This document shows positions 27,565-37,990 of a DNA stretch of 64,000 nt, one piece after another. The notes beneath the pieces were generated by a model. That model was not told where the DNA came from. It ran no database searches and worked only from the letters and a program-made list of their open reading frames with translations. Position 1 is the stretch's first letter. Each line of letters opens with the position of its first letter. Location: positions 1 to 64,000 of the IMG/VR virus record IMGVR_UViG_3300033141_006329. One strand, 5' to 3'. Both the position numbers and the translations under genes were made by a program.

Positions 27565-30500
27565 CTATTCAGACTCCAAATGACATGCAATTATCATATT
27601 GTCTAACAACTCTTTTTCTGGATTTATCTTACCTTGCCTAAATTCTGTTTTACCTTGTTGTATTATTTCTGAAATCATTTCATTTTTGGAAGCATGATCC
27701 GAAGATAATGAACCAAACATTTCATCTATTATAATAGGACAATCCCAAGCTAATAATCCATACAAATCCGACTCTCCAAATTTCTGACCACCGCCCCTTT
27801 TCTTTCCTGCTGTTGGTGCTAATGTCTTGGATACATAAGGCCCTACTCCCCTTGATGCCAGTTTCTTAGCTGATAATTGTTCCAACTTCTGTATAAGAAT
27901 AAATCCTATTGTAACGGGATCCGTCGTCATATTAAATTCCGGTAATTTCAGTTTATAACTAGGTTTCAATCCCAATATAGCAAGTGCCTCCAATATATTT
28001 GTTCTACTTGGGCCTTTGAACGGTGGAACTATAATAGACATATACCCCTTTTTCACTACTTGATTTTTCAAATCATTGAAACCTTTATCAGACATCGATT
28101 TTAATTTAGATATAACATTCTTACTATATTCTTTATTATCAGTACCGTCAAGTAATTCTAAAACTGTTCGAAGTAGAGATATAAATCTAGCTTTAGGTAA
28201 ATCTTTAATTCTACTAGCTAACTCTTTAGCTATCAACCCAACATGTGCTTCAGCCGTCTGACCCGTATTCATCCTATTTACAACCCCCAATGGGTTTAAA
28301 ATAATATCAACCTTTTCTCCCCAGGGTGTTATTGGCATGTTTTCATCTTTCTCTATTATAGAAACAACTCCTTTATTCCCATGTCTATTATTCATCTTAT
28401 CGCCTTTTTCCATTTTCAGATGTTGCTCCATAGTGAACTTTATCATTATACCATCAAATCTCTCATTTTTTTCTTTGAATGATCCTAAAGGATATTTACC
28501 ATTTATCTTAGTAAAATGTCCTCTAAATTCTTCATATACCGATTGTAATTTCTCAGGTATATCTTTAACATTTGCATATACTTCTATATTAGAAACTATT
28601 CCTCCTTCAGTTCTAAGATGTTTATATGCCTCAACATCATATGCTGCTTTTGAATGAGTTATGAGTATACCACCCTTATCTATTGTATCTCCAACATTGA
28701 CTATAGATAAAACATCATCATCTGGTTCTAAATATACTTTTTCTTCTTCTACGTGTACTGATATATATTTCTTGGCAGCACTTTCGGATATAACAATCCC
28801 GTCTTCAAAATTGTAACCTTTCCAGGCCATAAACGCGCATAATAAATTAACACCATTTGCTATACATCCTTCAGATATATTCGCACCTTCAGCCAATATT
28901 TGATCTCTCTTGACTGTTTGTCCTATCGCTACAGTGGGTTTAAATTTGCTTAAACCATTCTTACCTGATCCTGATTTGAGAACTACAGAACGAGTATCTA
29001 TGGGTACTTCTTTGCCTGTATCCTTATCTTTAACTATTATCATATCTGGTTTAATCGAAATAATAACGCCATTCACAGGACTCTTTTTTATAAAATTCTC
29101 ACTAAGTAAGTTCGTAAGTAAGGATTCATATCCAGTTTGAACTGCTGGTGGTTCTGCCCCCTCCGTTGGTATTACTTGTCTCGATTGGCCTGTACCCATC
29201 ATTACTCTACACCCATCATCACTTTCAACAAACGGAACCATTGCGGGACCCACACTCAATATTTCTGATGGTTTTACCAAGCTGGGATCTTTCATTGCAA
29301 ATGTGCCTCTAGCATTAGATATAGTTGCCCCCACAGTTAGATGCTGTTGTATTCCAACCATAGGACTATCTGGTGTTTCTAGTGGATCTATATTACCATA
29401 ATATGTATAATGTATATTTAATGCCTTGTGTGGAACTGCTGCTTTATCTGGTATACCTCCTATACCAACTGGCGTGATCCTCGTCATCATAGATAGTTCT
29501 TCCATAGGATTTGAGGTTTCAAGTAATTGACAATTTGGAGAATTTGTTACCTCAGAAAAAACCTTTGTCGGTGATAATGATAATCTAGCTGTTTCATCCC
29601 CTCCTAATTTTTTAGATAAATATTCATTATATGCCGATAATACTTGTTTCTGTATCTGGTTTGTAAACACTTCGGATGTTCTAACCCTTTGTTTATCCAT
29701 AGAGTTTCTATCATCTACTGTGCCTTTGACTACTTCTTCGCATATATATTTTATTACTGTAGGTAGTGTTGTTGGATCACCTTTGGATAATAATACTTCT
29801 CTAGCTACGGGCGTGAGTATAAACTTCCATGATTGGTCTATCCTATATATACAATTCCTTGTTCCTATTTCTTTTATTAATACCCTTTCCCAAAAACCTT
29901 TTTCTTCTATTTCAAAATGGTTTACAGGAAATGATACTACAGATCGTTTAAAAGATGAAATAACTTCTTCTCCTACTATTGAGCTGGTAGTAAATGTTAT
30001 AAATCTATCGTCTAACAATTTTATAGAATCGGGTTTCTTTTCTATACCTATTTCATATTTAATTTTGAATAGTTCCATAGTTTCTTTGAATCCATAATTA
30101 TATCCCAGAAACATCATTATAGGTAATTTGTAACCTGACATATATGCCATCAGATAAGGAGACTTTGTTTGTTGACTATAGATAGTTAGTTTGGCATATG
30201 ACGTTTCTAATCTTCCATGATATGGTTTATAGAAAAATATGGGATGAGTTATTAATTGATTTACCAAAACTTTGGGTTGACCATTTATAACAAATGTACC
30301 ATTCTCTGTTAGGTGTGGTATATCCAATTCTACCGTGTGTACTTCTCCTTCAGGGCCAGATAATTGTATTGTATATCTATCTTTCAATGTCTTCTTTAAT
30401 TCACCCGCAGGACTCTTTATGGGATTTATTTTAACACTTTTAACTTTGAGTGGTAAGTTTTCAGTTTCAAGAGGTTTAAATACATTTGTCAAATCTTTCA

Positions 30501-31617
30501 CGAGTAGTTCGGAAAAATCCTTTTTTCTTTTCTCCATTATATGGGTAGGAACTTGATTATCCACTAATTCTGCTGGTCTGGATATTCTAACTATCTCATT
30601 TCTAGATGTGCTTTTAACTTTGGGTCTGGTTAGAATGGTTTCCGAATATTGTTTCACCATCTTATCTGCTACTTTTTTCTTCTCCTCCTTAGTTTTACCC
30701 TTCATTCTTTTTGCTACAGTTACTGCTTTATCGGGATCACCTGTTACATGATAAACTATTGCAGATGTTACAACTTCATCTGTATCCAATTCATCTATAT
30801 TGACATTTCTATATTCGGGTACTGAATCCATCATATTTTTTATTATTGACTTTACTGCTACTTGAGTTTTTTCGGACCCATATTTCAGTGTATCTGTATT
30901 ATTAACAACTAATTTGGATACTACATCAGTCTCGGCATTCTCAACATCTTTGGGATCTGAACTTTCTAACATAGATAACATCGATCTAATTCTGGCAACA
31001 TTTACTGGTTTATCTTTATCATACAACAAAACAAATCTACCCCCAGAATGATCATAAAAGAATAATAATAATTTATCAAATGGTATATCAGTCCCCTCCT
31101 TCAACATGTTATATATTGGATATATTTTTCTACGTCTTAAACTTTTCATTATAGGTGCATCGAGATTAACTGAATAAACCAATACCCTCTGAAATAGATC
31201 TTCAGGCACACTTCCTACTGCCTCTATAATCTTACTTATAATCATAGCACCTCTACCTGTATTAAACCTCGTCAGTTTAAATTTCTTGGTACTATAATTT
31301 ATCAAATTACTCAAATCCAAATAAAAATTCTTACCTATAACATTTTTATAATCGCCTATAAATCCTTTTACTGGGCGCAATTTATGTTCTATTAATAATT
31401 TCTTATATTGGGGAGTCAGAAGAGTTCGAGGTTTCTTTGTAATTGGAACAAACACATGTCTAACTTGTGTCACCTTTATTCTCATGGCTGTAAATGCTTC
31501 TAAGAATTTATGATTTTCTGTAAGCATAGTAAGACTTATATTTTTTCCATCTATTCCAGCAGGAGGAATAATTAGACTATCTACGGGTCTATATGGTTTG
31601 ATATTTTTAAATTGCAT
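27565..31617 (-). CDS. rpoB: multisubunit RNA polymerase beta subunit with about 350-aa N-terminal extension
   Basis: DPLETPDS, DDGCRVMMG, GYNFED, GDKMNNRHGNKG, DIILNPLGVVNRMN, GGQKFGE. Confidence 0.95.
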   Translation of the reverse strand: MQFKNIKPYRPVDSLIIPPAGIDGKNISLTMLTENHKFLEAFTAMRIKVTQVRHVFVPITKKPRTLLTPQYKKLLIEHKLRPVKGFIGDYKNVIGKNFYLDLSNLINYSTKKFKLTRFNTGRGAMIISKIIEAVGSVPEDLFQRVLVYSVNLDAPIMKSLRRRKIYPIYNMLKEGTDIPFDKLLLFFYDHSGGRFVLLYDKDKPVNVARIRSMLSMLESSDPKDVENAETDVVSKLVVNNTDTLKYGSEKTQVAVKSIIKNMMDSVPEYRNVNIDELDTDEVVTSAIVYHVTGDPDKAVTVAKRMKGKTKEEKKKVADKMVKQYSETILTRPKVKSTSRNEIVRISRPAELVDNQVPTHIMEKRKKDFSELLVKDLTNVFKPLETENLPLKVKSVKINPIKSPAGELKKTLKDRYTIQLSGPEGEVHTVELDIPHLTENGTFVINGQPKVLVNQLITHPIFFYKPYHGRLETSYAKLTIYSQQTKSPYLMAYMSGYKLPIMMFLGYNYGFKETMELFKIKYEIGIEKKPDSIKLLDDRFITFTTSSIVGEEVISSFKRSVVSFPVNHFEIEEKGFWERVLIKEIGTRNCIYRIDQSWKFILTPVAREVLLSKGDPTTLPTVIKYICEEVVKGTVDDRNSMDKQRVRTSEVFTNQIQKQVLSAYNEYLSKKLGGDETARLSLSPTKVFSEVTNSPNCQLLETSNPMEELSMMTRITPVGIGGIPDKAAVPHKALNIHYTYYGNIDPLETPDSPMVGIQQHLTVGATISNARGTFAMKDPSLVKPSEILSVGPAMVPFVESDDGCRVMMGTGQSRQVIPTEGAEPPAVQTGYESLLTNLLSENFIKKSPVNGVIISIKPDMIIVKDKDTGKEVPIDTRSVVLKSGSGKNGLSKFKPTVAIGQTVKRDQILAEGANISEGCIANGVNLLCAFMAWKGYNFEDGIVISESAAKKYISVHVEEEKVYLEPDDDVLSIVNVGDTIDKGGILITHSKAAYDVEAYKHLRTEGGIVSNIEVYANVKDIPEKLQSVYEEFRGHFTKINGKYPLGSFKEKNERFDGIMIKFTMEQHLKMEKGDKMNNRHGNKGVVSIIEKDENMPITPWGEKVDIILNPLGVVNRMNTGQTAEAHVGLIAKELASRIKDLPKARFISLLRTVLELLDGTDNKEYSKNVISKLKSMSDKGFNDLKNQVVKKGYMSIIVPPFKGPSRTNILEALAILGLKPSYKLKLPEFNMTTDPVTIGFILIQKLEQLSAKKLASRGVGPYVSKTLAPTAGKKRGGGQKFGESDLYGLLAWDCPIIIDEMFGSLSSDHASKNEMISEIIQQGKTEFRQGKINPEKELLDNMIIACHLESE

Positions 31618-34600
31618 TATTTTTGCCTCTCCTCCGTTAGAGGTATTCCCATTAACACTTTCTCTATGGGGCTTTCTGGTGCCCTATCACTTATCATACC
31701 ATATTGAATTGCTTTCCCGAAGTTTTCGAACGAAAATCCCAATGGCCATGATATTATACTAGGTAATGTTTTTATAGAGTACATTTCTGGATTAAATGGT
31801 TCTATTAATCTGGCGGGTTGTTGTGGATCTTTTTTTGCTCTCAATATATTAGATATAATCACCTCCAAATGAGATGAATCCCATCCCCCAGTAGCAGCCA
31901 ATGCTTTATAAAACTTATTATATATTGTCGATACATCTTGCCAGGGATATTTTCCACCAACCAGTTTATCTAATTCTCTTGCAAGTTCTGTAAAGTTTTC
32001 TTGTGTCGGTTCCGCATATAATATCTTATCACCTTTAGTATACATATATGATATATAGGAATCGTCTTCCTCTACTTCTTCTGGGGTATAGATTTTAATA
32101 GGCTTTTCTATAGCTACAGGTATCTCTAAATCACCAAACGTAAGTGTAAAGTGACCTACCTTCATATCCAGATATTCTTTTTCTTTAACAATTGGAGAAT
32201 GTTCATATATAGATTTATTTATCCTAAGCATAACAAATTCAGAATTGCTAAATAGATCATCATCTTCTTGTTTAAAAGATTCTCTGATTTTAGGTTCAAT
32301 ATAATCATCTACTTTAGTCATAAGCTCTTTTATTATATCTAGTTTATTCAATATTAAAACTCCACCAAGATGAAATGAATTGTGGTTCTGCACTGCCCCT
32401 AACATAAATTCATTGGTCTCTGTTTTTATATCATATACAGGATCAATCCAAGTATATATCTCTTTTGCTACCATTATTGGATCGAATCCCTTTATAGGAT
32501 TATCATTCTTTTTAAATGACATAGGTTTAAATTCAAGGTCTTCTGTTACCTTTTCGCAAGGTATCATTTCTTTCTGTGCTGGTATGCAAATCTTTACAAC
32601 AAATTCTACCAATCCTCTCGCATCTCTATCCTTACAATGGAAACGATTACTGAGAGCAGAAATTGTAGTATGATATCCTAATTTTAAAGATATCATTTTA
32701 AACTGTTGTGTTAGATTATAACTTCGTATATATGTGCTAAACCTAGTGCAACCATGTTCGGGCATCGCACCTATAGTATCCAGATACCCTGCCAAAAAAC
32801 TTTTCAACCAATCTTTATTATAACTTAAAAAATCAGGTGCCAATCTCACATCCCCTACACCAATACCCAAAACTATACCTTCAACAATATCTTTATTATA
32901 AGTAAACACTACGTATGTTGCAGATTCTACTGTTGATCTTTTTTCAATTTCCTTGAGTTTAAAATCTAAGCGTTCGCTTTCTCTTATTAATCTATCTATT
33001 TGGTCTTCATTTTCTATACGTATATCAATTGTGTCTGGAGATTTTTTCCCTACACTACCTCTAGCACAATATGCCCCTATAACATAACCTGCTGTCTTGG
33101 GTCTAATTCTATCTTTATTTATAATGAATGGTTCATTGTCTATCCATATGGCATCACCCTTGACTACATCCCCTGCAAGTTTTTCCACCACCTCATTATC
33201 TTCGGCTATTAAATATTTGGTATGCCATGATGTATATGTCTCTTTACCGACTAATCTAAATTCTGAATTCTTGTGCCATTTACATATTGGATTTTTCTTA
33301 ATCCATAAGGGATGATCAGCTTGACATACTAAAATGTGTCCTGTGTTAGTTCCAATGACAATCATTTTATCTTTGGGTGGATGTTTTTGCATTACAGATG
33401 TTTTAACCATTCCATCTTTTCCCTGGATACTACTCACAAATTCTTTTGTTTCTAGATCGCCTTCTATCACTGGTTCTACATCTATATTATCCCAAAGGTC
33501 ATCCATAGTAATCCATCTGTCATTATGGTATACTAAACCTTTAGATGACTTCATTATTTTCTCACTGAGCGAGGCTACTTGTTGTACTGCAACCATTCCC
33601 ACATTTTCTGTTTTTAACTGGGCTAACAATTTACCATAACATGTTCTACAAATTTTCTTACTTTTGCAAAATATAGGACTCCTTAGATTAATAACTCTGC
33701 CTATCATATCTTTAGTTAGTGGTTTCAACACACCTTTCTCGTCGTGAACAAATCTACCTGTCATCCTTTTGAATAGATCCTCTGTAAGTTTAAGTTGTAG
33801 TGTCTGTCTCGTACCACAATTGCCATTATTTACATCTGCTTGAACATTACCAACAACATATATCATCTTTCTATAGCCATATCCACCTGCCCCTGTATTT
33901 AAGGATCTATCTATAGTTCCTTTCCTTGATCCAGCGGCAGCTTCAAAATATTCTTTCGGTGTATATCCTTCATTTATAGACTTGGTTATGGGCGGCAAAA
34001 CATTTCCCATAGGATCTTGAACTAGTCCTTTACATACCATCATTTGTCTTATTTGATTCATTCCTTTAGATCCACCAGATGCCACAATATAATATAAATC
34101 TGAATTCGTATCTTTAAAATGTTTCAATAATGCTACTTCTATTTTATCAAGTATGTCTGATTGTTCTGAAACAATTTTAGTGGCACTTAATTCATCCTTC
34201 ATTTTTATTAAGTGTGGCGGGATTTTGAGTTGTTCCAAATTCAAAGTTTTTGGATATATTGTATTATATTTAAATCCTAATCTCATCAGTCTATCTGTTG
34301 TATTTGCAAAATCTACATCGCTCTTTTCTATGATCTCTTTTAATATATTTGTAATTGTTTTCTTACTTACATCAGCATCTACGAAAGGATACCACTGCGG
34401 CAAAACATTATTAAATATTATTCTGCCTGCTGTTGTTTTTATTTTCTTTCCCTTGTAGGTCATTTCAACTTTATGAGCTATATGTAATTTTTCTGCATCA
34501 GCTATAGAAGAGATGGATTTAACTTTAGGATCTTTTTGGGTGGCAGCAGTAAGTGTGAATATTCCTACGATTACATCTTTAGTTAATTCGAATATGGGAT

Positions 34601-36461
34601 CATTAATAGAATCCTTACTATGTACTGTTATCATTTTATCCTTAACTTCTTGTTGGGCTTCTTCGGACATTGGAGCGTAGAGAGCCATTGTATCATATAA
34701 AAATATACCCGTGTCTGTGGTAAATGTTTTATAATCCTCAACTGTAAAATCGTAACCAATTGTCTTATTCGGATCATGTTGTATATTCAGACAAGTTGCG
34801 GGTATAATTTCTATTTCCTTAGCATTTTGTTTGTGTAACAAATTTTTAAATGATTCTGATATATTGGATTCTTCTATAATGTGAGAAGGGATTGTGATCG
34901 ATTTTTGAGTATAATTTTTATTCCTGATACAATATCTAACATCATTCGTAACATCATCTGTATTAGTAAAATCTGGATGTTTTAATAACTTCTTGGGACA
35001 CCAAACAATCCTCCCTCTTTTTAAGGGAGGGGTAGATTTTACAATCTCAATATATTCTCTTAATTTTCTTTTTTTCTCAGGGTGGTTTAAAAGAGTTTGT
35101 AGACGTATGAGAAATTCAGAATATTCTTTTCGTATTGGAATGTATAAAACATAATAATGACGATATTCAGCTGGATCTATTATAGGTATTTTCTGTCCAT
35201 CTATCCCTAATGTATAGTTTTTAATATCTACTGAAATCGAACTCTCTATACCTAAACGATAATAAAGAACATATCGAACATCTTCAATGAGTTTTTTAGA
35301 TTTGGATGTAGCGGAAACTCCTCTGGGTCTAACCATACCATCTGTATCAATATATCCTGCAAATAATCCCATCACAAAATCGTCTGTGGAATTTAAAACC
35401 CAATCGGGAAGATGCTTATCAGAACAGGTATTTCCAAATTGATTTATATTAAATGGTACTTTTCTATTATATCCCCATCTTGTTGCCGGTTTATAACCAT
35501 TTCCATTTTTATCCTTTAAATTATAGGGATGATCATATTCTCGTAATTGATTTCTAAGTGGGGGTACTCCTATAAAATCTTCCAATAGCTCTTGAGCTAT
35601 ATTTGTCCACCCATTTCCAATGTCAGTATTTGAAGAATGTAATAATGAGATCCTTTGAGAAATATCACCATCACCTAATAATGCACCTATATAATAACCA
35701 AACTTTTCTTCGGTTATATTATTTTGGATTTCTTCATTTAATATAAATGATCTAGCATCTTTTGATGTCTTGGGTCTGCTCATAGATCTAATTAAATAAT
35801 ATCTTTTAGGGTCTTCAATAATTTCTTCGGGCGTGACTTTTCTGATTTCATCCTGATTATAATCAATAGCAACGACAGAATGATTATTAGATATCCATAA
35901 TTCCTTAACATCGCCTATAAGAGTATTTTTCTTCCTCCTATTGACAGAAAACATTTTGATATTTTCATGAATCGACCAATGGCTTATTTTTTTATATTCA
36001 ATTTTTCCATCATTGTTAATAGCTTGACAAAAAATTTCATCTAAAACGCTATAATTTTTAACAACTCTACCACCATTCTTACGTTTTTCATATTCTAATT
36101 CACATCTAAATTGTTTGCAAAAATCTGAAATATGAATTCGCATTGGAATATAATTTTCATTTTCACGTCTGTAAAGTCTTAAAAAACAATAACTTGAGTC
36201 ACCATCGAAATCAAATCCGTACTTTACCGATGCTGCGGGATGTACTTCCATTGTACTTCCTTCCACAATTTTAACATAAGCCCCTTGAGATCTAGCACTA
36301 TGAACATTAGGATCTCGTTTGTATATTACAACTTTCCCAGCATCCTCTATCTCTCGTTTAGCAACATCAAAAATTACATCATGTATAGCTTTGGGAACTT
36401 TATACCCCCGACTTATCATTTTTAAAATAAGTCTTATCTCTTCTGTTGTAGCTTGCTCCAC
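31617..36461 (-). CDS. rpoC: RNA polymerase beta' central/C-terminal part containing two inteins (about 722 aa spliced)
   Basis: KRDPNVH, DFDGD, GSRKG..D...T...GY bridge helix, IMK/SFH trigger loop. Confidence 0.93.
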   Translation of the reverse strand: MEQATTEEIRLILKMISRGYKVPKAIHDVIFDVAKREIEDAGKVVIYKRDPNVHSARSQGAYVKIVEGSTMEVHPAASVKYGFDFDGDSSYCFLRLYRRENENYIPMRIHISDFCKQFRCELEYEKRKNGGRVVKNYSVLDEIFCQAINNDGKIEYKKISHWSIHENIKMFSVNRRKKNTLIGDVKELWISNNHSVVAIDYNQDEIRKVTPEEIIEDPKRYYLIRSMSRPKTSKDARSFILNEEIQNNITEEKFGYYIGALLGDGDISQRISLLHSSNTDIGNGWTNIAQELLEDFIGVPPLRNQLREYDHPYNLKDKNGNGYKPATRWGYNRKVPFNINQFGNTCSDKHLPDWVLNSTDDFVMGLFAGYIDTDGMVRPRGVSATSKSKKLIEDVRYVLYYRLGIESSISVDIKNYTLGIDGQKIPIIDPAEYRHYYVLYIPIRKEYSEFLIRLQTLLNHPEKKRKLREYIEIVKSTPPLKRGRIVWCPKKLLKHPDFTNTDDVTNDVRYCIRNKNYTQKSITIPSHIIEESNISESFKNLLHKQNAKEIEIIPATCLNIQHDPNKTIGYDFTVEDYKTFTTDTGIFLYDTMALYAPMSEEAQQEVKDKMITVHSKDSINDPIFELTKDVIVGIFTLTAATQKDPKVKSISSIADAEKLHIAHKVEMTYKGKKIKTTAGRIIFNNVLPQWYPFVDADVSKKTITNILKEIIEKSDVDFANTTDRLMRLGFKYNTIYPKTLNLEQLKIPPHLIKMKDELSATKIVSEQSDILDKIEVALLKHFKDTNSDLYYIVASGGSKGMNQIRQMMVCKGLVQDPMGNVLPPITKSINEGYTPKEYFEAAAGSRKGTIDRSLNTGAGGYGYRKMIYVVGNVQADVNNGNCGTRQTLQLKLTEDLFKRMTGRFVHDEKGVLKPLTKDMIGRVINLRSPIFCKSKKICRTCYGKLLAQLKTENVGMVAVQQVASLSEKIMKSSKGLVYHNDRWITMDDLWDNIDVEPVIEGDLETKEFVSSIQGKDGMVKTSVMQKHPPKDKMIVIGTNTGHILVCQADHPLWIKKNPICKWHKNSEFRLVGKETYTSWHTKYLIAEDNEVVEKLAGDVVKGDAIWIDNEPFIINKDRIRPKTAGYVIGAYCARGSVGKKSPDTIDIRIENEDQIDRLIRESERLDFKLKEIEKRSTVESATYVVFTYNKDIVEGIVLGIGVGDVRLAPDFLSYNKDWLKSFLAGYLDTIGAMPEHGCTRFSTYIRSYNLTQQFKMISLKLGYHTTISALSNRFHCKDRDARGLVEFVVKICIPAQKEMIPCEKVTEDLEFKPMSFKKNDNPIKGFDPIMVAKEIYTWIDPVYDIKTETNEFMLGAVQNHNSFHLGGVLILNKLDIIKELMTKVDDYIEPKIRESFKQEDDDLFSNSEFVMLRINKSIYEHSPIVKEKEYLDMKVGHFTLTFGDLEIPVAIEKPIKIYTPEEVEEDDSYISYMYTKGDKILYAEPTQENFTELARELDKLVGGKYPWQDVSTIYNKFYKALAATGGWDSSHLEVIISNILRAKKDPQQPARLIEPFNPEMYSIKTLPSIISWPLGFSFENFGKAIQYGMISDRAPESPIEKVLMGIPLTEERQK
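32379..33548 (-). mobile_element. intein 2 (390 aa) in the trigger loop, degenerate LAGLIDADG motifs
   Basis: IMK|SSKG...ADHPLW...VYDIKT...QNHN|SFHLGG; VIGAYCARG and LAGYLDTIG. Confidence 0.9.
34692..36197 (-). mobile_element. intein 1 (502 aa) with LAGLIDADG endonuclease, atypical C-terminus
   Basis: DFDGD|SSYC...SNNH...IGALLGDG...FAGYIDTDG...YDFTV...GIFLYD|TMALY. Confidence 0.85.
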
Positions 36462-37045
36462 TATAATTTCCTCATAATTTTCTTTTTCTGAAGCTCCAAT
36501 TTTTGAATAGCCTTTAGTATCTTAAATTTACACAAATCAGGATTATCTGATTCATCACAATTCTTCAATTGATCTATTAATATTGCTTTATAATCATCTA
36601 AGGATTTAATTCTACATACTATCCTATCTTCACCTTTCAAATTTTTACACGGTCCATACAATTTTGTATTATAATAATCAAAAGCTTTTTTGACAATAAA
36701 AATACCAAGAATTGCAGCAGGTATACCTATAGCTAATTTTTTAGCTAAGGGGATATTACTCTTCAATTTATCAATACCTTTAGTTATATCATCACTAATG
36801 TTTCTCGCATTTTTAGATGCAGTAGAAATATCTTTAGATGTGCCTGATATTTTCTTAAATATATCTTTGAATCCCTCCGTATAATATAATAAGAATTTCT
36901 TATATTCGTATAATCTATCAGACATATTGGAATCAGATATCATTACTTGCTCCAAAATATCTTCCAATAGCTCATCGTTAGAAGAATTTATATCTTTAAT
37001 TATATCCTTTATTTTACTCGTGTAATATTCTTCGCTCAAATGCAT
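36461..37045 (-). CDS. membrane-anchored helical protein with Cys pairs
   Basis: one hydrophobic helix; C...C and C...PDLC; stop overlaps the GTG start of beta'. Confidence 0.6.
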   Translation of the reverse strand: MHLSEEYYTSKIKDIIKDINSSNDELLEDILEQVMISDSNMSDRLYEYKKFLLYYTEGFKDIFKKISGTSKDISTASKNARNISDDITKGIDKLKSNIPLAKKLAIGIPAAILGIFIVKKAFDYYNTKLYGPCKNLKGEDRIVCRIKSLDDYKAILIDQLKNCDESDNPDLCKFKILKAIQKLELQKKKIMRKL

Positions 37046-37057
37046 AGCGTTTCTCCT

Positions 37058-37990
37058 CTACATTAATAGATCTGGGTCTAATTCTTTCCCTAAAACTTCT
37101 TTAACAGCTATATGAAATTCTTCGGGTATATTTTTTGATTGGGGTGAATTAACCAAACCGTATATTATAATAGGTTCAAATATACTACATGCCACCTTGA
37201 ATGGTAATCCAACTGTTCCTAAATTTAATTCTGGATTAGGTGTAATTACTGCCCTCGCTGAGAAATCCACACGTTTGCCCAATAATAAATTTCTAACTAT
37301 TCCATGTTTTTTAGATACCGATACTCTAATTAATTCATACAATTCCTTAATCAAGTTTTGCATCTTATAACTCAATATATCGAATATCGGCCCAGACACA
37401 CCTTTCAACTGATTAGATTGTATAATTATTTTTCTATAGAGAGCATTCAATTCACCTATTTCTGGTTTCTCTCCAGGGCTTTCAGGGATTGATATCTCTC
37501 GATACCTGGGAGGAATAACTATAAGTTTAGACATAAAGAACAGATCTTTTTTTATATTGCTATATATCATCTTTATAAGTTTATTCCTATCGCCACCCTT
37601 TTCATCTTCTCTAAATTTTATTTTTTGAATATTATCAATAAAAGAAGAAAACCCATCCAACTCCCCTTCAGGATCTTCAACCAATAATCCATCATCACCT
37701 ATAGAATATATTTTCTCGCTTGATATTAATGGTTGTATCTTTCTTTCTATCCTTTTATTTAAAATATCAAATAGTGATGGATGTATGACATTACAATTCA
37801 ATTCTATCCAGGAATAACTCTTTGCTCTATCAGGGGAAGCATCTAATCCAAATGTATCCTCTGACATCAATCCTTGTGGATGATATGCATAATTTCTGCC
37901 CATAAATATCTGGGGTGTAGATATAGGACCAATGCTATTATTTTTCCTTATAAAATCATCAGGACTAAGGATCTTAATCATCCAACCCAC
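37058..37990 (-). CDS. rpoC: RNA polymerase beta' N-terminal part
   Basis: GLMSEDTFG, WIELN, VIPPRYR, LLLGKRVDFSARAVITP, GLP. Confidence 0.92.
   Translation of the reverse strand: MGWMIKILSPDDFIRKNNSIGPISTPQIFMGRNYAYHPQGLMSEDTFGLDASPDRAKSYSWIELNCNVIHPSLFDILNKRIERKIQPLISSEKIYSIGDDGLLVEDPEGELDGFSSFIDNIQKIKFREDEKGGDRNKLIKMIYSNIKKDLFFMSKLIVIPPRYREISIPESPGEKPEIGELNALYRKIIIQSNQLKGVSGPIFDILSYKMQNLIKELYELIRVSVSKKHGIVRNLLLGKRVDFSARAVITPNPELNLGTVGLPFKVACSIFEPIIIYGLVNSPQSKNIPEEFHIAVKEVLGKELDPDLLM

What the first reader, a model, noticed from the sequence alone, without database searches (positions are those of the whole stretch)
34692..36197. Intein inserted right after the catalytic DFDGD and ending in Tyr-Asp instead of His-Asn
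Seen: DFDGD|SSYC...GIFLYD|TMALY (codons TAT GAT ACA). Removing 502 aa restores DFDGD-TMALYAP, matching canonical DFDGD-QMAVH. Block B (SNNH), block F (YDFTV) and two intact-looking LAGLIDADG motifs are present. Known: inteins normally end in Asn, rarely Gln or Asp, usually after His. Inference: non-standard splicing chemistry at a site where splicing is essential, possibly a conditional switch on RNAP activity.
Basis: partly seen in the sequence, partly recalled or inferred. Interest (0 to 1): 0.7.

Follow-up and report, generated by a model that had tools for sequence, protein, structure and literature searches.

The report
Asp-ending intein in phage RNA polymerase
A large phage's RNA polymerase gene is interrupted, right after its catalytic DFDGD motif, by a self-splicing intein ending in Tyr-Asp instead of His-Asn; this odd ending is real and is shared by a large, apparently undescribed family of inteins at this one site.

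Summary
On the minus strand, window 34692..36197 encodes a 502-aa in-frame insert in the C-terminal piece of a split phage RNA polymerase beta' (gene 31617..36461). It begins with Ser (TCA), ends Tyr-Asp (TAT GAT) and is followed by Thr. Intein-free relatives read DFDGD-T/A/Q-MA(I/V/L)(Y/F), so the junctions are exact.

The insert has intein blocks B and F, two intact LAGLIDADG motifs, and a confident model (pLDDT 87) whose best PDB match is PI-PfuI.

The Asp is not an error:
- An independent marine-sediment assembly of a ~95% relative has the same TAT GAT ACA.
- Five relatives use both GAT and GAC.
- About 89 distinct proteins carrying this intein all end in [Y/F/W/Q]-Asp followed by Thr/Ser/Cys.
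- The family includes mini-inteins and naturally split versions.
- Presence is patchy on the host-protein tree (at least 10 changes).

Most likely it is an active Ser1/Thr+1 class 1 intein that resolves the branched intermediate by Asp cyclisation. That chemistry is rare but already documented. Nothing supports a conditional switch.

I rate it a new variant of a known kind, of moderate interest.

The parts
31617..36461 (-). Gene for the C-terminal piece of a split phage multisubunit RNA polymerase beta' (1614 aa precursor, GTG start). It carries two inteins; the mature protein would be about 722 aa.
   Evidence: ORF list and translation. Pfam Rpb1 domains 2, 3, 4 and 5. Intein-free homologues of 719-731 aa.
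36198..36461 (-). N-extein, aa 1-88, ending in the catalytic DFDGD (36198..36212). Asp88 is the -1 residue.
   Evidence: PF00623 match over aa 33-93.
34692..36197 (-). Intein 1, 502 aa (aa 89-590): Ser1 ... Tyr589-Asp590.
   Evidence: AF2 model with pLDDT 87 and pTM 0.85. Foldseek top PDB match is PI-PfuI 1dq3 at E 4e-16, followed by the TliVMA intein and PI-SceI.
36195..36197 (-). Ser1 codon (TCA), the predicted nucleophile of step 1.
   Evidence: Residue 1 is Ser, Thr or Cys in all family members that have an N-flank (S 34, T 11, C 7). Residue 4 (Cys here) is not conserved.
35967..35969 (-). His165, invariant in the family. It is a candidate equivalent of the 'NX' His of Ser1 inteins.
   Evidence: Invariant in A1, A2 and A3 and in nearly all hmmalign rows. 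The equivalence to the NX His of PMC10189870 is not shown: His165 is preceded by Ile, not Lys/Arg.
35880..35891 (-). Block B S191-N-N-H194, the Ser variant of TxxH.
   Evidence: S191 and H194 are invariant in 15 of 15 aligned relatives and in nearly all of the top representative hits.
34842..35783 (-). LAGLIDADG homing-endonuclease insert, roughly aa 227-540. It is absent from the mini-intein relatives. Motifs lie at 35667..35696 and 35337..35366.
   Evidence: Pfam PF14528 at E 6.8e-13. D264/G265 and D374/G375 are invariant in the 13 full-length relatives. Mini-inteins P0038 and P0053 lack this part. Fold matches to I-DmoI and PI-PfuI.
34722..34757 (-). Block F GYDFTVEDYKTF. Asp571 (F:4) is invariant. 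The position that carries His in the common 'HNF' motif is Lys578 here and varies in the family.
   Evidence: The alignment to the HNF consensus was made by eye from my own knowledge.
34692..34709 (-). Block G GIFLYD. Tyr589-Asp590 (TAT GAT, 34692..34697) replace the usual His-Asn.
   Evidence: Asp is invariant and the penultimate residue is Y/F/W/Q in about 89 proteins.
34689..34691 (-). Thr591 (ACA), the +1 nucleophile and first residue of the C-extein.
   Evidence: +1 is T 76, S 10, C 3 in Asp-ending members. The same position in 64 intein-free alleles of the clade is T 30, Q 20, A 9, V 2, M 2, E 1.
32379..33548 (-). Intein 2, 390 aa (aa 972-1361). It has the standard ends EKIMK|S...HN|SFHLGG and is not part of the finding.
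   Evidence: Absent from P0005, P0007 and P0009, which read EKIMKSFH(L/T)GG.
27565..31617 (-). RNA polymerase beta subunit gene (1350 aa), immediately downstream.
   Evidence: Pfam Rpb2 domains 6 and 3. It is the only Rpb2-type gene found in the 223-kb record.
37058..37990 (-). N-terminal piece of beta' (310 aa), upstream.
   Evidence: PF00623 match. The same gene order is seen in the relatives L004, L010 and L011.

Best explanation
This is an active, homing-endonuclease-bearing class 1 intein in the only detectable beta' gene of a large uncultured phage. It is inserted between the last Asp of the Mg-binding DFDGD loop and the following Thr.

Inferred mechanism:
1. Ser89 makes an N-O acyl shift at the Asp88-Ser89 bond, helped by block B Ser191/His194, Asp571 and possibly His165.
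2. Thr591 takes over the N-extein by transesterification.
3. The terminal Asp590 cyclises onto its own backbone carbonyl, giving a cyclic anhydride instead of the succinimide made by Asn. This frees the intein.
4. An O-N shift leaves the native DFDGD-TMALY loop.

The Tyr-Asp end is the inherited, selected hallmark of a whole allelic intein lineage that lives at this one site in phage-type multisubunit RNA polymerases. Members come as full-length, mini and naturally split forms. It is not a lesion or a peculiarity of this phage.

Shown here: the anatomy, the junctions, the fold, the conservation and the patchy distribution. Inferred: that splicing happens, and that step 3 goes through Asp cyclisation.
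For: Junctions: intein-free alleles read DFDGD-x-MA, and the empty-site DNA of the closest relative matches exactly.

Fold: AF2 pLDDT 87 and pTM 0.85. Top PDB matches are intein/homing endonucleases: PI-PfuI at E 4e-16, then the TliVMA intein and PI-SceI. A profile search also hits PI-PfuI and PI-PkoII.

Catalytic set: residue 1 is S/T/C, block B S..H, F:4 Asp, terminal Asp and +1 T/S/C are conserved in 15 aligned relatives at 34-63% identity and across the top 150 of 5135 representative hits. In that set 89 proteins end in xD: QD 35, YD 32, WD 14, FD 6.

Selection at the amino-acid level: the terminal Asp is encoded by GAT four times and GAC twice, and Ser1 by TCA or AGC/AGT, in six loci.

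The +1 nucleophile is required only when the intein is present: 89 of 89 T/S/C with the intein against 30 of 64 without it. This argues for true ligation.

Mobility: intein presence needs at least 10 changes on a 51-row extein tree, and intein-free and intein-bearing alleles are sisters. Both LAGLIDADG acidic residues are invariant.

Split relatives: in L004 the two halves are separate genes with two unrelated genes between them. The halves are predicted to dock with ipSAE 0.71 against a best control of 0.00; that mark was reached by 51 of 78 solved complexes and 2 of 108 mismatched pairs. A split form makes sense only if the Asp-ending chemistry works.

Literature: Asp, Gln or Glu at the C-terminus use the same pathway with cyclisation of that residue (PMC4031507).
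Against: No experiment or proteomic data show the spliced junction. Both His residues that usually assist step 3 are absent: the penultimate G:6 His and the block F 'HNF' His. Efficient Asp cyclisation therefore has no identified helper. The -1 residue is Asp, which in another intein promoted off-pathway N-terminal cleavage (Minteer et al. 2017, seen only as a title in the reference list of PMC7708050). The candidate NX His does not have the Lys/Arg neighbour described for Ser1 inteins.
Confidence: 0.8

Rival explanations
1. Sequencing or assembly error: the true last codon is AAT (Asn) and the intein is canonical at that position.
For: Only one assembly of the source sample is on record (JGI 3300033141), and raw reads of that sample were not available.
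Against: A contig from an independent marine-sediment run of a ~95% relative is identical at 34689..34697. Asp is invariant in all roughly 89 family members, encoded by both GAT and GAC. The penultimate residue is also non-canonical throughout the family.
Confidence: 0.01
2. Decayed, non-splicing intein: the insert is tolerated or the gene is dead, and the Tyr-Asp end reflects loss of function.
For: His-Asn is replaced and the block F His is missing. The record is only about 71% complete, so a second RNA polymerase set could exist elsewhere.
Against: The reading frame stays open over 1614 codons. All other catalytic positions and the endonuclease acidic residues are invariant down to about 30% identity. 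The +1 nucleophile is strictly kept only in intein-bearing alleles. The same ending is kept in mini and split forms. The insertion sits in the Mg-binding loop, where a 502-aa insert should abolish catalysis (established RNAP structure knowledge; inference).
Confidence: 0.06
3. Self-cleaving module without ligation: the element cuts itself out and leaves two beta' fragments. One ends in DFDGD and one starts at TMALY, and they assemble non-covalently, as other phage beta' pieces do.
For: Beta' is already split into separate genes in this clade. Asp at -1 and at the C-terminus could each cyclise and cleave. Some distant Rpb1-like gene calls start exactly after DFDGD.
Against: Cleavage alone would not need a +1 Thr/Ser/Cys, yet it is present in 89 of 89 members. 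Residue 1 is always a nucleophile. Intein-free alleles keep the loop continuous.
Confidence: 0.05
4. Conditional switch: the Asp end makes branch resolution depend on pH, Mg2+ or temperature, so RNA polymerase maturation is timed during infection.
For: Asp cyclisation is expected to depend on the protonation state (general chemistry). The junction sits beside an acidic metal-binding loop. The Asp ending is found only at this site among the hits examined. Cys-free Ser1 inteins can be pH sensitive: the PolB16 intein was reported at pH 6.0, and its H68A mutant behaved differently at pH 6 and pH 7 (PMC10189870).
Against: No conserved sensor feature was found. The trait is shared by very diverse hosts, including fused beta-beta' proteins, which fits simple inheritance. 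No data exist on rates.
Confidence: 0.1

Closest known systems
Inteins with a C-terminal Asp or Gln (Chy RIR1, CIV RNR; Amitai, Dassa & Pietrokovski 2004, as cited in review PMC4031507)
   Same: A class 1 pathway in which step 3 uses cyclisation of a residue other than Asn. The review states that Asp-, Gln- and Glu-ending inteins use the same mechanism.
   Different: The host protein and insertion site differ. Here the Asp is invariant across a whole allelic family and is always paired with Tyr/Phe/Trp/Gln instead of His. The name of the Asp example comes from my memory plus the cited title.
PolD DP2 ('Pol II') intein of Pyrococcus/Thermococcus
   Same: It sits inside the homologous acidic catalytic loop of a two-barrel polymerase (N|CDGD, equivalent to the DFDGD loop). 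Its C-terminal residue is also atypical: Gln in the Pab and Mma Pol II inteins, with slow splicing.
   Different: The insertion point is four residues earlier in the loop. The +1 residue is Cys (N962|C963). The host is an archaeal DNA polymerase. The terminus is Gln, not Asp.
PI-PfuI, TliVMA intein and PI-SceI (solved intein/LAGLIDADG endonucleases)
   Same: They share the two-domain architecture, a HINT splicing domain plus a LAGLIDADG endonuclease. They are the best structural matches (E 4e-16 to 1e-11) and give weak profile matches.
   Different: Sequence identity is only 10-15%. These inteins end in the canonical way, which I state from my own knowledge.
Cysteine-free Ser1/Thr+1 inteins with the NX histidine (PolB16 OarG, Aes123 PolB1, Psp Pol-1)
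   Same: Ser at residue 1 and Thr/Ser at +1, giving oxyester intermediates. An invariant His lies upstream of block B. Natural split members exist in both groups. Aes123 PolB1 (9hth) appears among the fold hits.
   Different: PolB16 and Aes123 PolB1 have a terminal Asn (N183A and N159A mutants). The His here is preceded by Ile, not Lys/Arg, so its equivalence to NX is unproven.
Archaeal RNA polymerase A'' intein (NCBIfam NF011491 / PRK14898)
   Same: It is the only NCBIfam hit of intein 1 (E 8.5e-11, intein residues 55-321). It is another intein in the largest RNAP subunit.
   Different: The subunit region and site differ, and the similarity covers only part of the intein. It is not allelic.

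Membership tests
Class 1 intein (HINT splicing domain) | An in-frame insert in a conserved host protein whose removal restores the host motif | tested here: met
   DFDGD|502 aa|TMALY compared with the intein-free DFDGD-x-MA alleles and the empty-site DNA.
Class 1 intein (HINT splicing domain) | Nucleophile (Cys/Ser/Thr) at intein residue 1 | tested here: met
   Ser89 here. In the family: S 34, T 11, C 7.
Class 1 intein (HINT splicing domain) | Block B T-x-x-H | tested here: met
   S191-N-N-H194, with Ser in place of Thr. Both residues are invariant.
Class 1 intein (HINT splicing domain) | Block F with Asp at F:4 | tested here: met
   Asp571 in GYDFTVE is invariant.
Class 1 intein (HINT splicing domain) | Block G ending in His-Asn | tested here: not met
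   Tyr589-Asp590 here and [Y/F/W/Q]-Asp family-wide. This departure is a documented variant (PMC4031507), so it does not exclude membership.
Class 1 intein (HINT splicing domain) | Cys/Ser/Thr at +1 | tested here: met
   Thr591 here. In the family: T 76, S 10, C 3.
Class 1 intein (HINT splicing domain) | HINT fold | tested here: met
   AF2 pLDDT 87. Foldseek top hits are solved inteins.
Class 1 intein (HINT splicing domain) | Actual protein splicing, shown by a ligated extein product | not testable with these tools
   Needs expression or mass spectrometry.
LAGLIDADG homing endonuclease | Two LAGLIDADG motifs, each with an acidic residue at the penultimate position | tested here: met
   YYIGALLGDG (D264) and LFAGYIDTDG (D374), invariant in 13 of 13 full-length relatives. 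PF14528 at E 6.8e-13.
LAGLIDADG homing endonuclease | Cleavage of the intein-free allele (homing) | not testable with these tools
   Only indirect support: patchy distribution with at least 10 changes on the extein tree.
Asp-terminated inteins (Amitai 2004 type) | C-terminal Asp directly before a +1 nucleophile | tested here: met
   GAT ACA here. The Asp is invariant in the family.
Asp-terminated inteins (Amitai 2004 type) | Common descent with the known Asp-ending intein | not tested
Class 3 intein | Cys at F:4 (the WCT triplet) with a non-nucleophilic residue 1 | tested here: not met
   F:4 is Asp571 and residue 1 is Ser. Criterion taken from PMC4031507.
Class 2 intein | Ala at residue 1, with direct attack by +1 Cys | tested here: not met
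   Residue 1 is Ser and +1 is Thr.
Ser1 inteins with the NX motif (PMC10189870) | A conserved His upstream of block B, preceded by Lys/Arg and close to Ser1 | tested here: inconclusive
   His165 is invariant but preceded by Ile. A profile search of the PDB with the N-terminal half found nothing to align to.

The most novel reading that the evidence does not exclude
The [Tyr/Phe/Trp/Gln]-Asp ending marks a mechanistically distinct, site-bound intein lineage. In it, branch resolution runs through an Asp anhydride without either of the usual assisting histidines. It may exploit, or be gated by, the acidic Mg-binding DFDGD loop next to it, or by pH, so that phage RNA polymerase maturation is condition-dependent. 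The lineage would also supply natural cysteine-free split inteins with a new C-terminal chemistry.
Probability: 0.15. Interest if true: 0.75.

Novelty: new variant of a known kind. Interest (0 to 1): 0.5.

Why it matters
Inteins ending in Asp were known from very few examples. Here, roughly 89 distinct natural sequences at one insertion site all keep Asp, never His-Asn, and also lack the block F His. That is a ready-made comparative data set for learning how step 3 of protein splicing can be catalysed without the textbook residues.

The family uses only Ser/Thr nucleophiles in most members and includes naturally split forms. This is the kind of intein sought for protein ligation under oxidising conditions.

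For phage biology, it shows that the catalytic loop of phage multisubunit RNA polymerases is a recurrent home for a mobile intein. Genome annotators should expect beta' genes to be enlarged or split there.

The single intein in this window is an ordinary member of that family.

Tried and rejected
- Megablast of the gene and tblastn of the intein against 50,697 deposited phage genomes found no match for the intein. Only distant extein matches to jumbo-phage beta' appeared.
- A scan of IMG/VR viral contigs with the intein found nothing.
- Raw reads of the source sample were not available. Only Logan contigs of a related phage could be laid.
- A PDB profile search with the N-terminal splicing half gave no hit, so the NX-His equivalence could not be settled.
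- Model coordinates are not exposed to scripts, so no active-site distances were measured.
- Literature searches (intein with jumbo phage; DFDGD; rpoC; multisubunit RNA polymerase; C-terminal Asp) found no description of an intein at this RNAP site. They found only gyrA, TerL and PolB inteins in phages, and RPB2-type inteins in eukaryotes and viruses.
- Alternative junction registers were considered and rejected. An intein starting at Cys92 would leave three extra residues after DFDGD, and Cys92 is not conserved. The register DFDG|D...Y|DTMALY restores the same sequence but has no nucleophiles.
- A regex tally of C-termini was noisy for non-family inteins. The hmmalign table is the cleaner source.
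Full report
WHAT IS THERE

The finding's coordinates are right, but the feature is on the minus strand. Window 31617..36461 (-) is one 1614-codon ORF with a GTG start. Pfam recognises RNA polymerase Rpb1 domains 2, 3, 4 and 5 in it, plus a LAGLIDADG_3 domain and a weak intein-splicing match.

It is the C-terminal piece of a split beta' subunit. A 310-aa N-terminal beta' piece lies upstream at 37058..37990 (-). The 1350-aa beta subunit follows at 27565..31617 (-). The window is the first 64 kb of a 223-kb IMG/VR phage record. That record was cut from a 306-kb JGI metagenome contig. The window's GC content is 32.7%. No second Rpb1- or Rpb2-type gene is detectable in the record.

DFDGD is aa 84-88. 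The insert is aa 89-590, or 34692..36197, 502 codons. It starts with TCA (Ser) and ends TAT GAT (Tyr-Asp), and the next codon is ACA (Thr).

THE JUNCTIONS

A search with the extein part found many homologues without the insert. They read DFDGD-[T/Q/A/V/M/E]-M-A-[I/V/L]-[Y/F].

The closest one, P0025, has 68% extein identity. It reads FDHDGD|TMAIYAP, and its DNA is GAT GGG GAT|ACT ATG GCC. The window has GAT GGT GAC|[intein]|ACA ATG GCT.

Two other registers were considered. Starting the intein at Cys92 would leave three extra residues in the catalytic loop, and that Cys is not conserved. The register DFDG|D...Y|D restores the same protein but has no nucleophile at either junction.

IT IS AN INTEIN

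- Block B is S191-N-N-H194.
- Block F is GYDFTVE, with Asp571.
- Block G is GIFLYD.
- Two LAGLIDADG motifs carry their acidic residues, D264 and D374.

An AlphaFold2 model built on 15 relatives has mean pLDDT 87 and pTM 0.85. Its best PDB matches are intein/homing endonucleases: PI-PfuI (E 4e-16), the TliVMA intein and PI-SceI. The central domain matches I-DmoI. A profile search also finds PI-PfuI and PI-PkoII.

IS THE ASP REAL?

However, an independent marine-sediment run holds a contig about 95% identical over this stretch. It differs at seven positions between 34600 and 34800, and none of them falls in 34689..34697.

Comparative evidence is more telling:
- Twelve homologous beta' proteins carry the same intein at the same site (29-62% identity). 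All end in Tyr/Phe-Asp followed by Thr/Ser.
- In six loci with DNA, the terminal Asp is GAT four times and GAC twice. Ser1 is TCA or AGC/AGT. The amino acids, not the codons, are being conserved.

A LARGE FAMILY

A profile of the intein was searched against 1.84 billion cluster representatives. It gave 5135 hits at E<=1e-3, 782 at E<=1e-10 and 62 at E<=1e-30. I aligned the best 150, plus earlier hits, back to the profile and made a separate tally.
- 89 proteins end in x-Asp: Gln-Asp 35, Tyr-Asp 32, Trp-Asp 14, Phe-Asp 6.
- The +1 residue is Thr 76, Ser 10, Cys 3.
- Residue 1, where the N-flank is present, is Ser 34, Thr 11, Cys 7.

Wherever the flanks could be read, the site is the same: D[F/Y/H/V]DG[D/N] before the intein and the T-M-x-x-x-V/A-P beta' motif after it.

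Hosts range from split beta' pieces like this one to 2500-3700-aa proteins. Two of these that I scanned with Pfam (2526 and 3387 aa) are fused beta-beta' proteins. Other inteins in those same proteins end His-Asn or Ser-Asn. So the Asp ending belongs to this allele, not to the host.

The family also contains mini-inteins without the endonuclease: P0038 (203 aa, ends Gln-Asp) and P0053 (221 aa, ends Tyr-Asp).

NATURALLY SPLIT FORMS

In locus L004 one gene encodes the N-extein plus 137 aa of intein, then a stop. A sulfotransferase gene and a methyltransferase gene follow. The next gene begins with about 53 aa of intein ending Gln-Asp, directly followed by the C-extein.

At least 20 cluster representatives look like such N-halves and 6 like C-halves. 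The two halves of L004 are predicted to dock. The ipSAE score is 0.71 against a best control of 0.00. That mark was reached by 51 of 78 solved complexes and 2 of 108 mismatched pairs. Solved split inteins exist, so the pass may partly reflect memory of those.

MOBILITY AND SELECTION

I built an extein tree of 51 homologues with the intein columns removed (quick IQ-TREE; SH-aLRT support only). Presence or absence of the intein needs at least 10 changes. Intein-free and intein-bearing alleles are well-supported sisters, for example P0030 with P0003/P0006/P0007, P0027 with P0009, and P0041 with P0013. Together with the invariant endonuclease residues, this fits a homing element that is repeatedly gained and lost.

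In 64 intein-free alleles of the clade, the residue after DFDGD is Thr in only 30; the rest are Gln 20, Ala 9 and others. With the intein present it is always Thr, Ser or Cys. That is what true splicing requires and what mere self-cleavage would not.

HOW IT MOST LIKELY WORKS

It follows the class 1 pathway with oxyester intermediates (Ser1, Thr+1). Step 3 is carried out by cyclisation of the terminal Asp instead of Asn.

The review by Mills, Johnson and Perler states that inteins with C-terminal Asp, Gln or Glu use the same mechanism apart from which residue cyclises. It adds that some such inteins are slow and others prefer the unusual residue. It also says inteins without the penultimate His exist (PMC4031507).

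The unusual point is that neither the penultimate His nor the block F 'HNF' His is present anywhere in the family. The block F position is Lys578 here and variable elsewhere. No helper for Asp cyclisation can be named yet.

An invariant His165 upstream of block B may correspond to the NX His described for Ser1 inteins (PMC10189870). It lacks the preceding Lys/Arg, and I could not test its position.

The -1 residue is necessarily Asp. In the PolD intein, a flanking Asp led to off-pathway N-cleavage (Minteer et al. 2017, known to me only from the title cited in PMC7708050). The loss of the histidines might limit that side reaction. This last idea is speculation.

COMPARISON WITH WHAT IS KNOWN

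- The chemistry is that of the rare Asp- and Gln-ending inteins.
- The architecture is that of PI-PfuI and PI-SceI.
- The nucleophiles are those of the cysteine-free Ser1 inteins.
- The nearest positional analogue is the PolD DP2 intein. It sits in the homologous acidic loop (N|CDGD) of a two-barrel polymerase and often ends in Gln.

None of the papers I could search describes an intein at the DFDGD site of an RNA polymerase, or a family defined by an Asp terminus. Subscription literature and InBase were not searchable.

VERDICT

The chemistry is a known variant, and the conditional-switch idea has no evidence.

The window's intein is an ordinary member of a large, apparently undescribed, Asp-ending allelic family. 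I rate it a new variant of a known kind, with interest about 0.5.

Noticed in passing
window 32379..33548 (-): The same gene holds a second intein of 390 aa (aa 972-1361) with standard ends, EKIMK|S...HN|SFHLGG. Its two LAGLIDADG-like motifs, YVIGAYCARG and FLAGYLDTIG, have Arg and Ile where the acidic residues should be, so its endonuclease is probably dead. It is absent from relatives P0005, P0007 and P0009.
   Followed up: partly
L004:2945-7067: A related phage carries a naturally split version of the same DFDGD intein. One gene encodes the N-extein plus IntN (P0278). Sulfotransferase and methyltransferase genes follow. Then comes IntC plus the C-extein (P0047), ending Gln-Asp|Thr. The halves are predicted to dock: ipSAE 0.71 against a best control of 0.00, a mark reached by 51 of 78 solved complexes and 2 of 108 mismatched pairs. 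These are candidate cysteine-free split inteins.
   Followed up: yes
proteins P0191, P0206, P0240, P0261, P0268, P0269, P0276 (no window coordinates): A sister subfamily occupies the same DFDGD site in 2500-3700-aa proteins (not Pfam-scanned; similar-sized family members are fused beta-beta'). It begins with Gln, Ala or Asp, so it has no residue-1 nucleophile. It has Asp/Arg in place of the block B Ser/His, and it ends Ser-Asn|Thr-Met. How, or whether, it splices is unexplained.
   Followed up: no
proteins P0003-P0006, P0038 and others; window 36195..36197 for comparison: Thr occupies intein residue 1 in 11 family members and Cys in 7. Ser1 is encoded by both TCA and AGC/AGT. Thr and Cys are the single-step intermediates between the two Ser codon families. 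All three nucleophiles therefore seem to be tolerated at position 1.
   Followed up: partly
window 36461..37045 (-): A 194-aa ORF with no Pfam hit lies between the beta' N-piece and the intein-bearing piece. The closest intein-free relative (L011) has no gene there. Other relatives have unrelated ORFs of 96 or 289 aa at that position. It may be another mobile insertion.
   Followed up: no
proteins P0015, P0017-P0021 (no window coordinates): Rpb1-like proteins with eukaryote-type domains (1945-2507 aa) found through endonuclease similarity have gene calls that begin exactly at (E)MN(L/I)H, the residues right after DFDGD. This suggests a gene break, intron or split element at the same loop in those genomes.
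   Followed up: no
protein P0041 (no window coordinates): One relative has a different intein inserted two residues downstream of the intein-2 site (EKIMKSFH|C...). The trigger-loop region FH(L/T)GG is therefore a second hot spot with at least two insertion points.
   Followed up: no
whole window / G000: IMG/VR labels the 223-kb record a 'provirus', but it was cut from a 306-kb metagenome contig. The window itself looks like a large lytic-type phage: type II topoisomerase subunits, UvsX-like recombinase, ribonucleotide reductase, baseplate hub and its own RNA polymerase. No tRNA genes are present in the window.
   Followed up: partly
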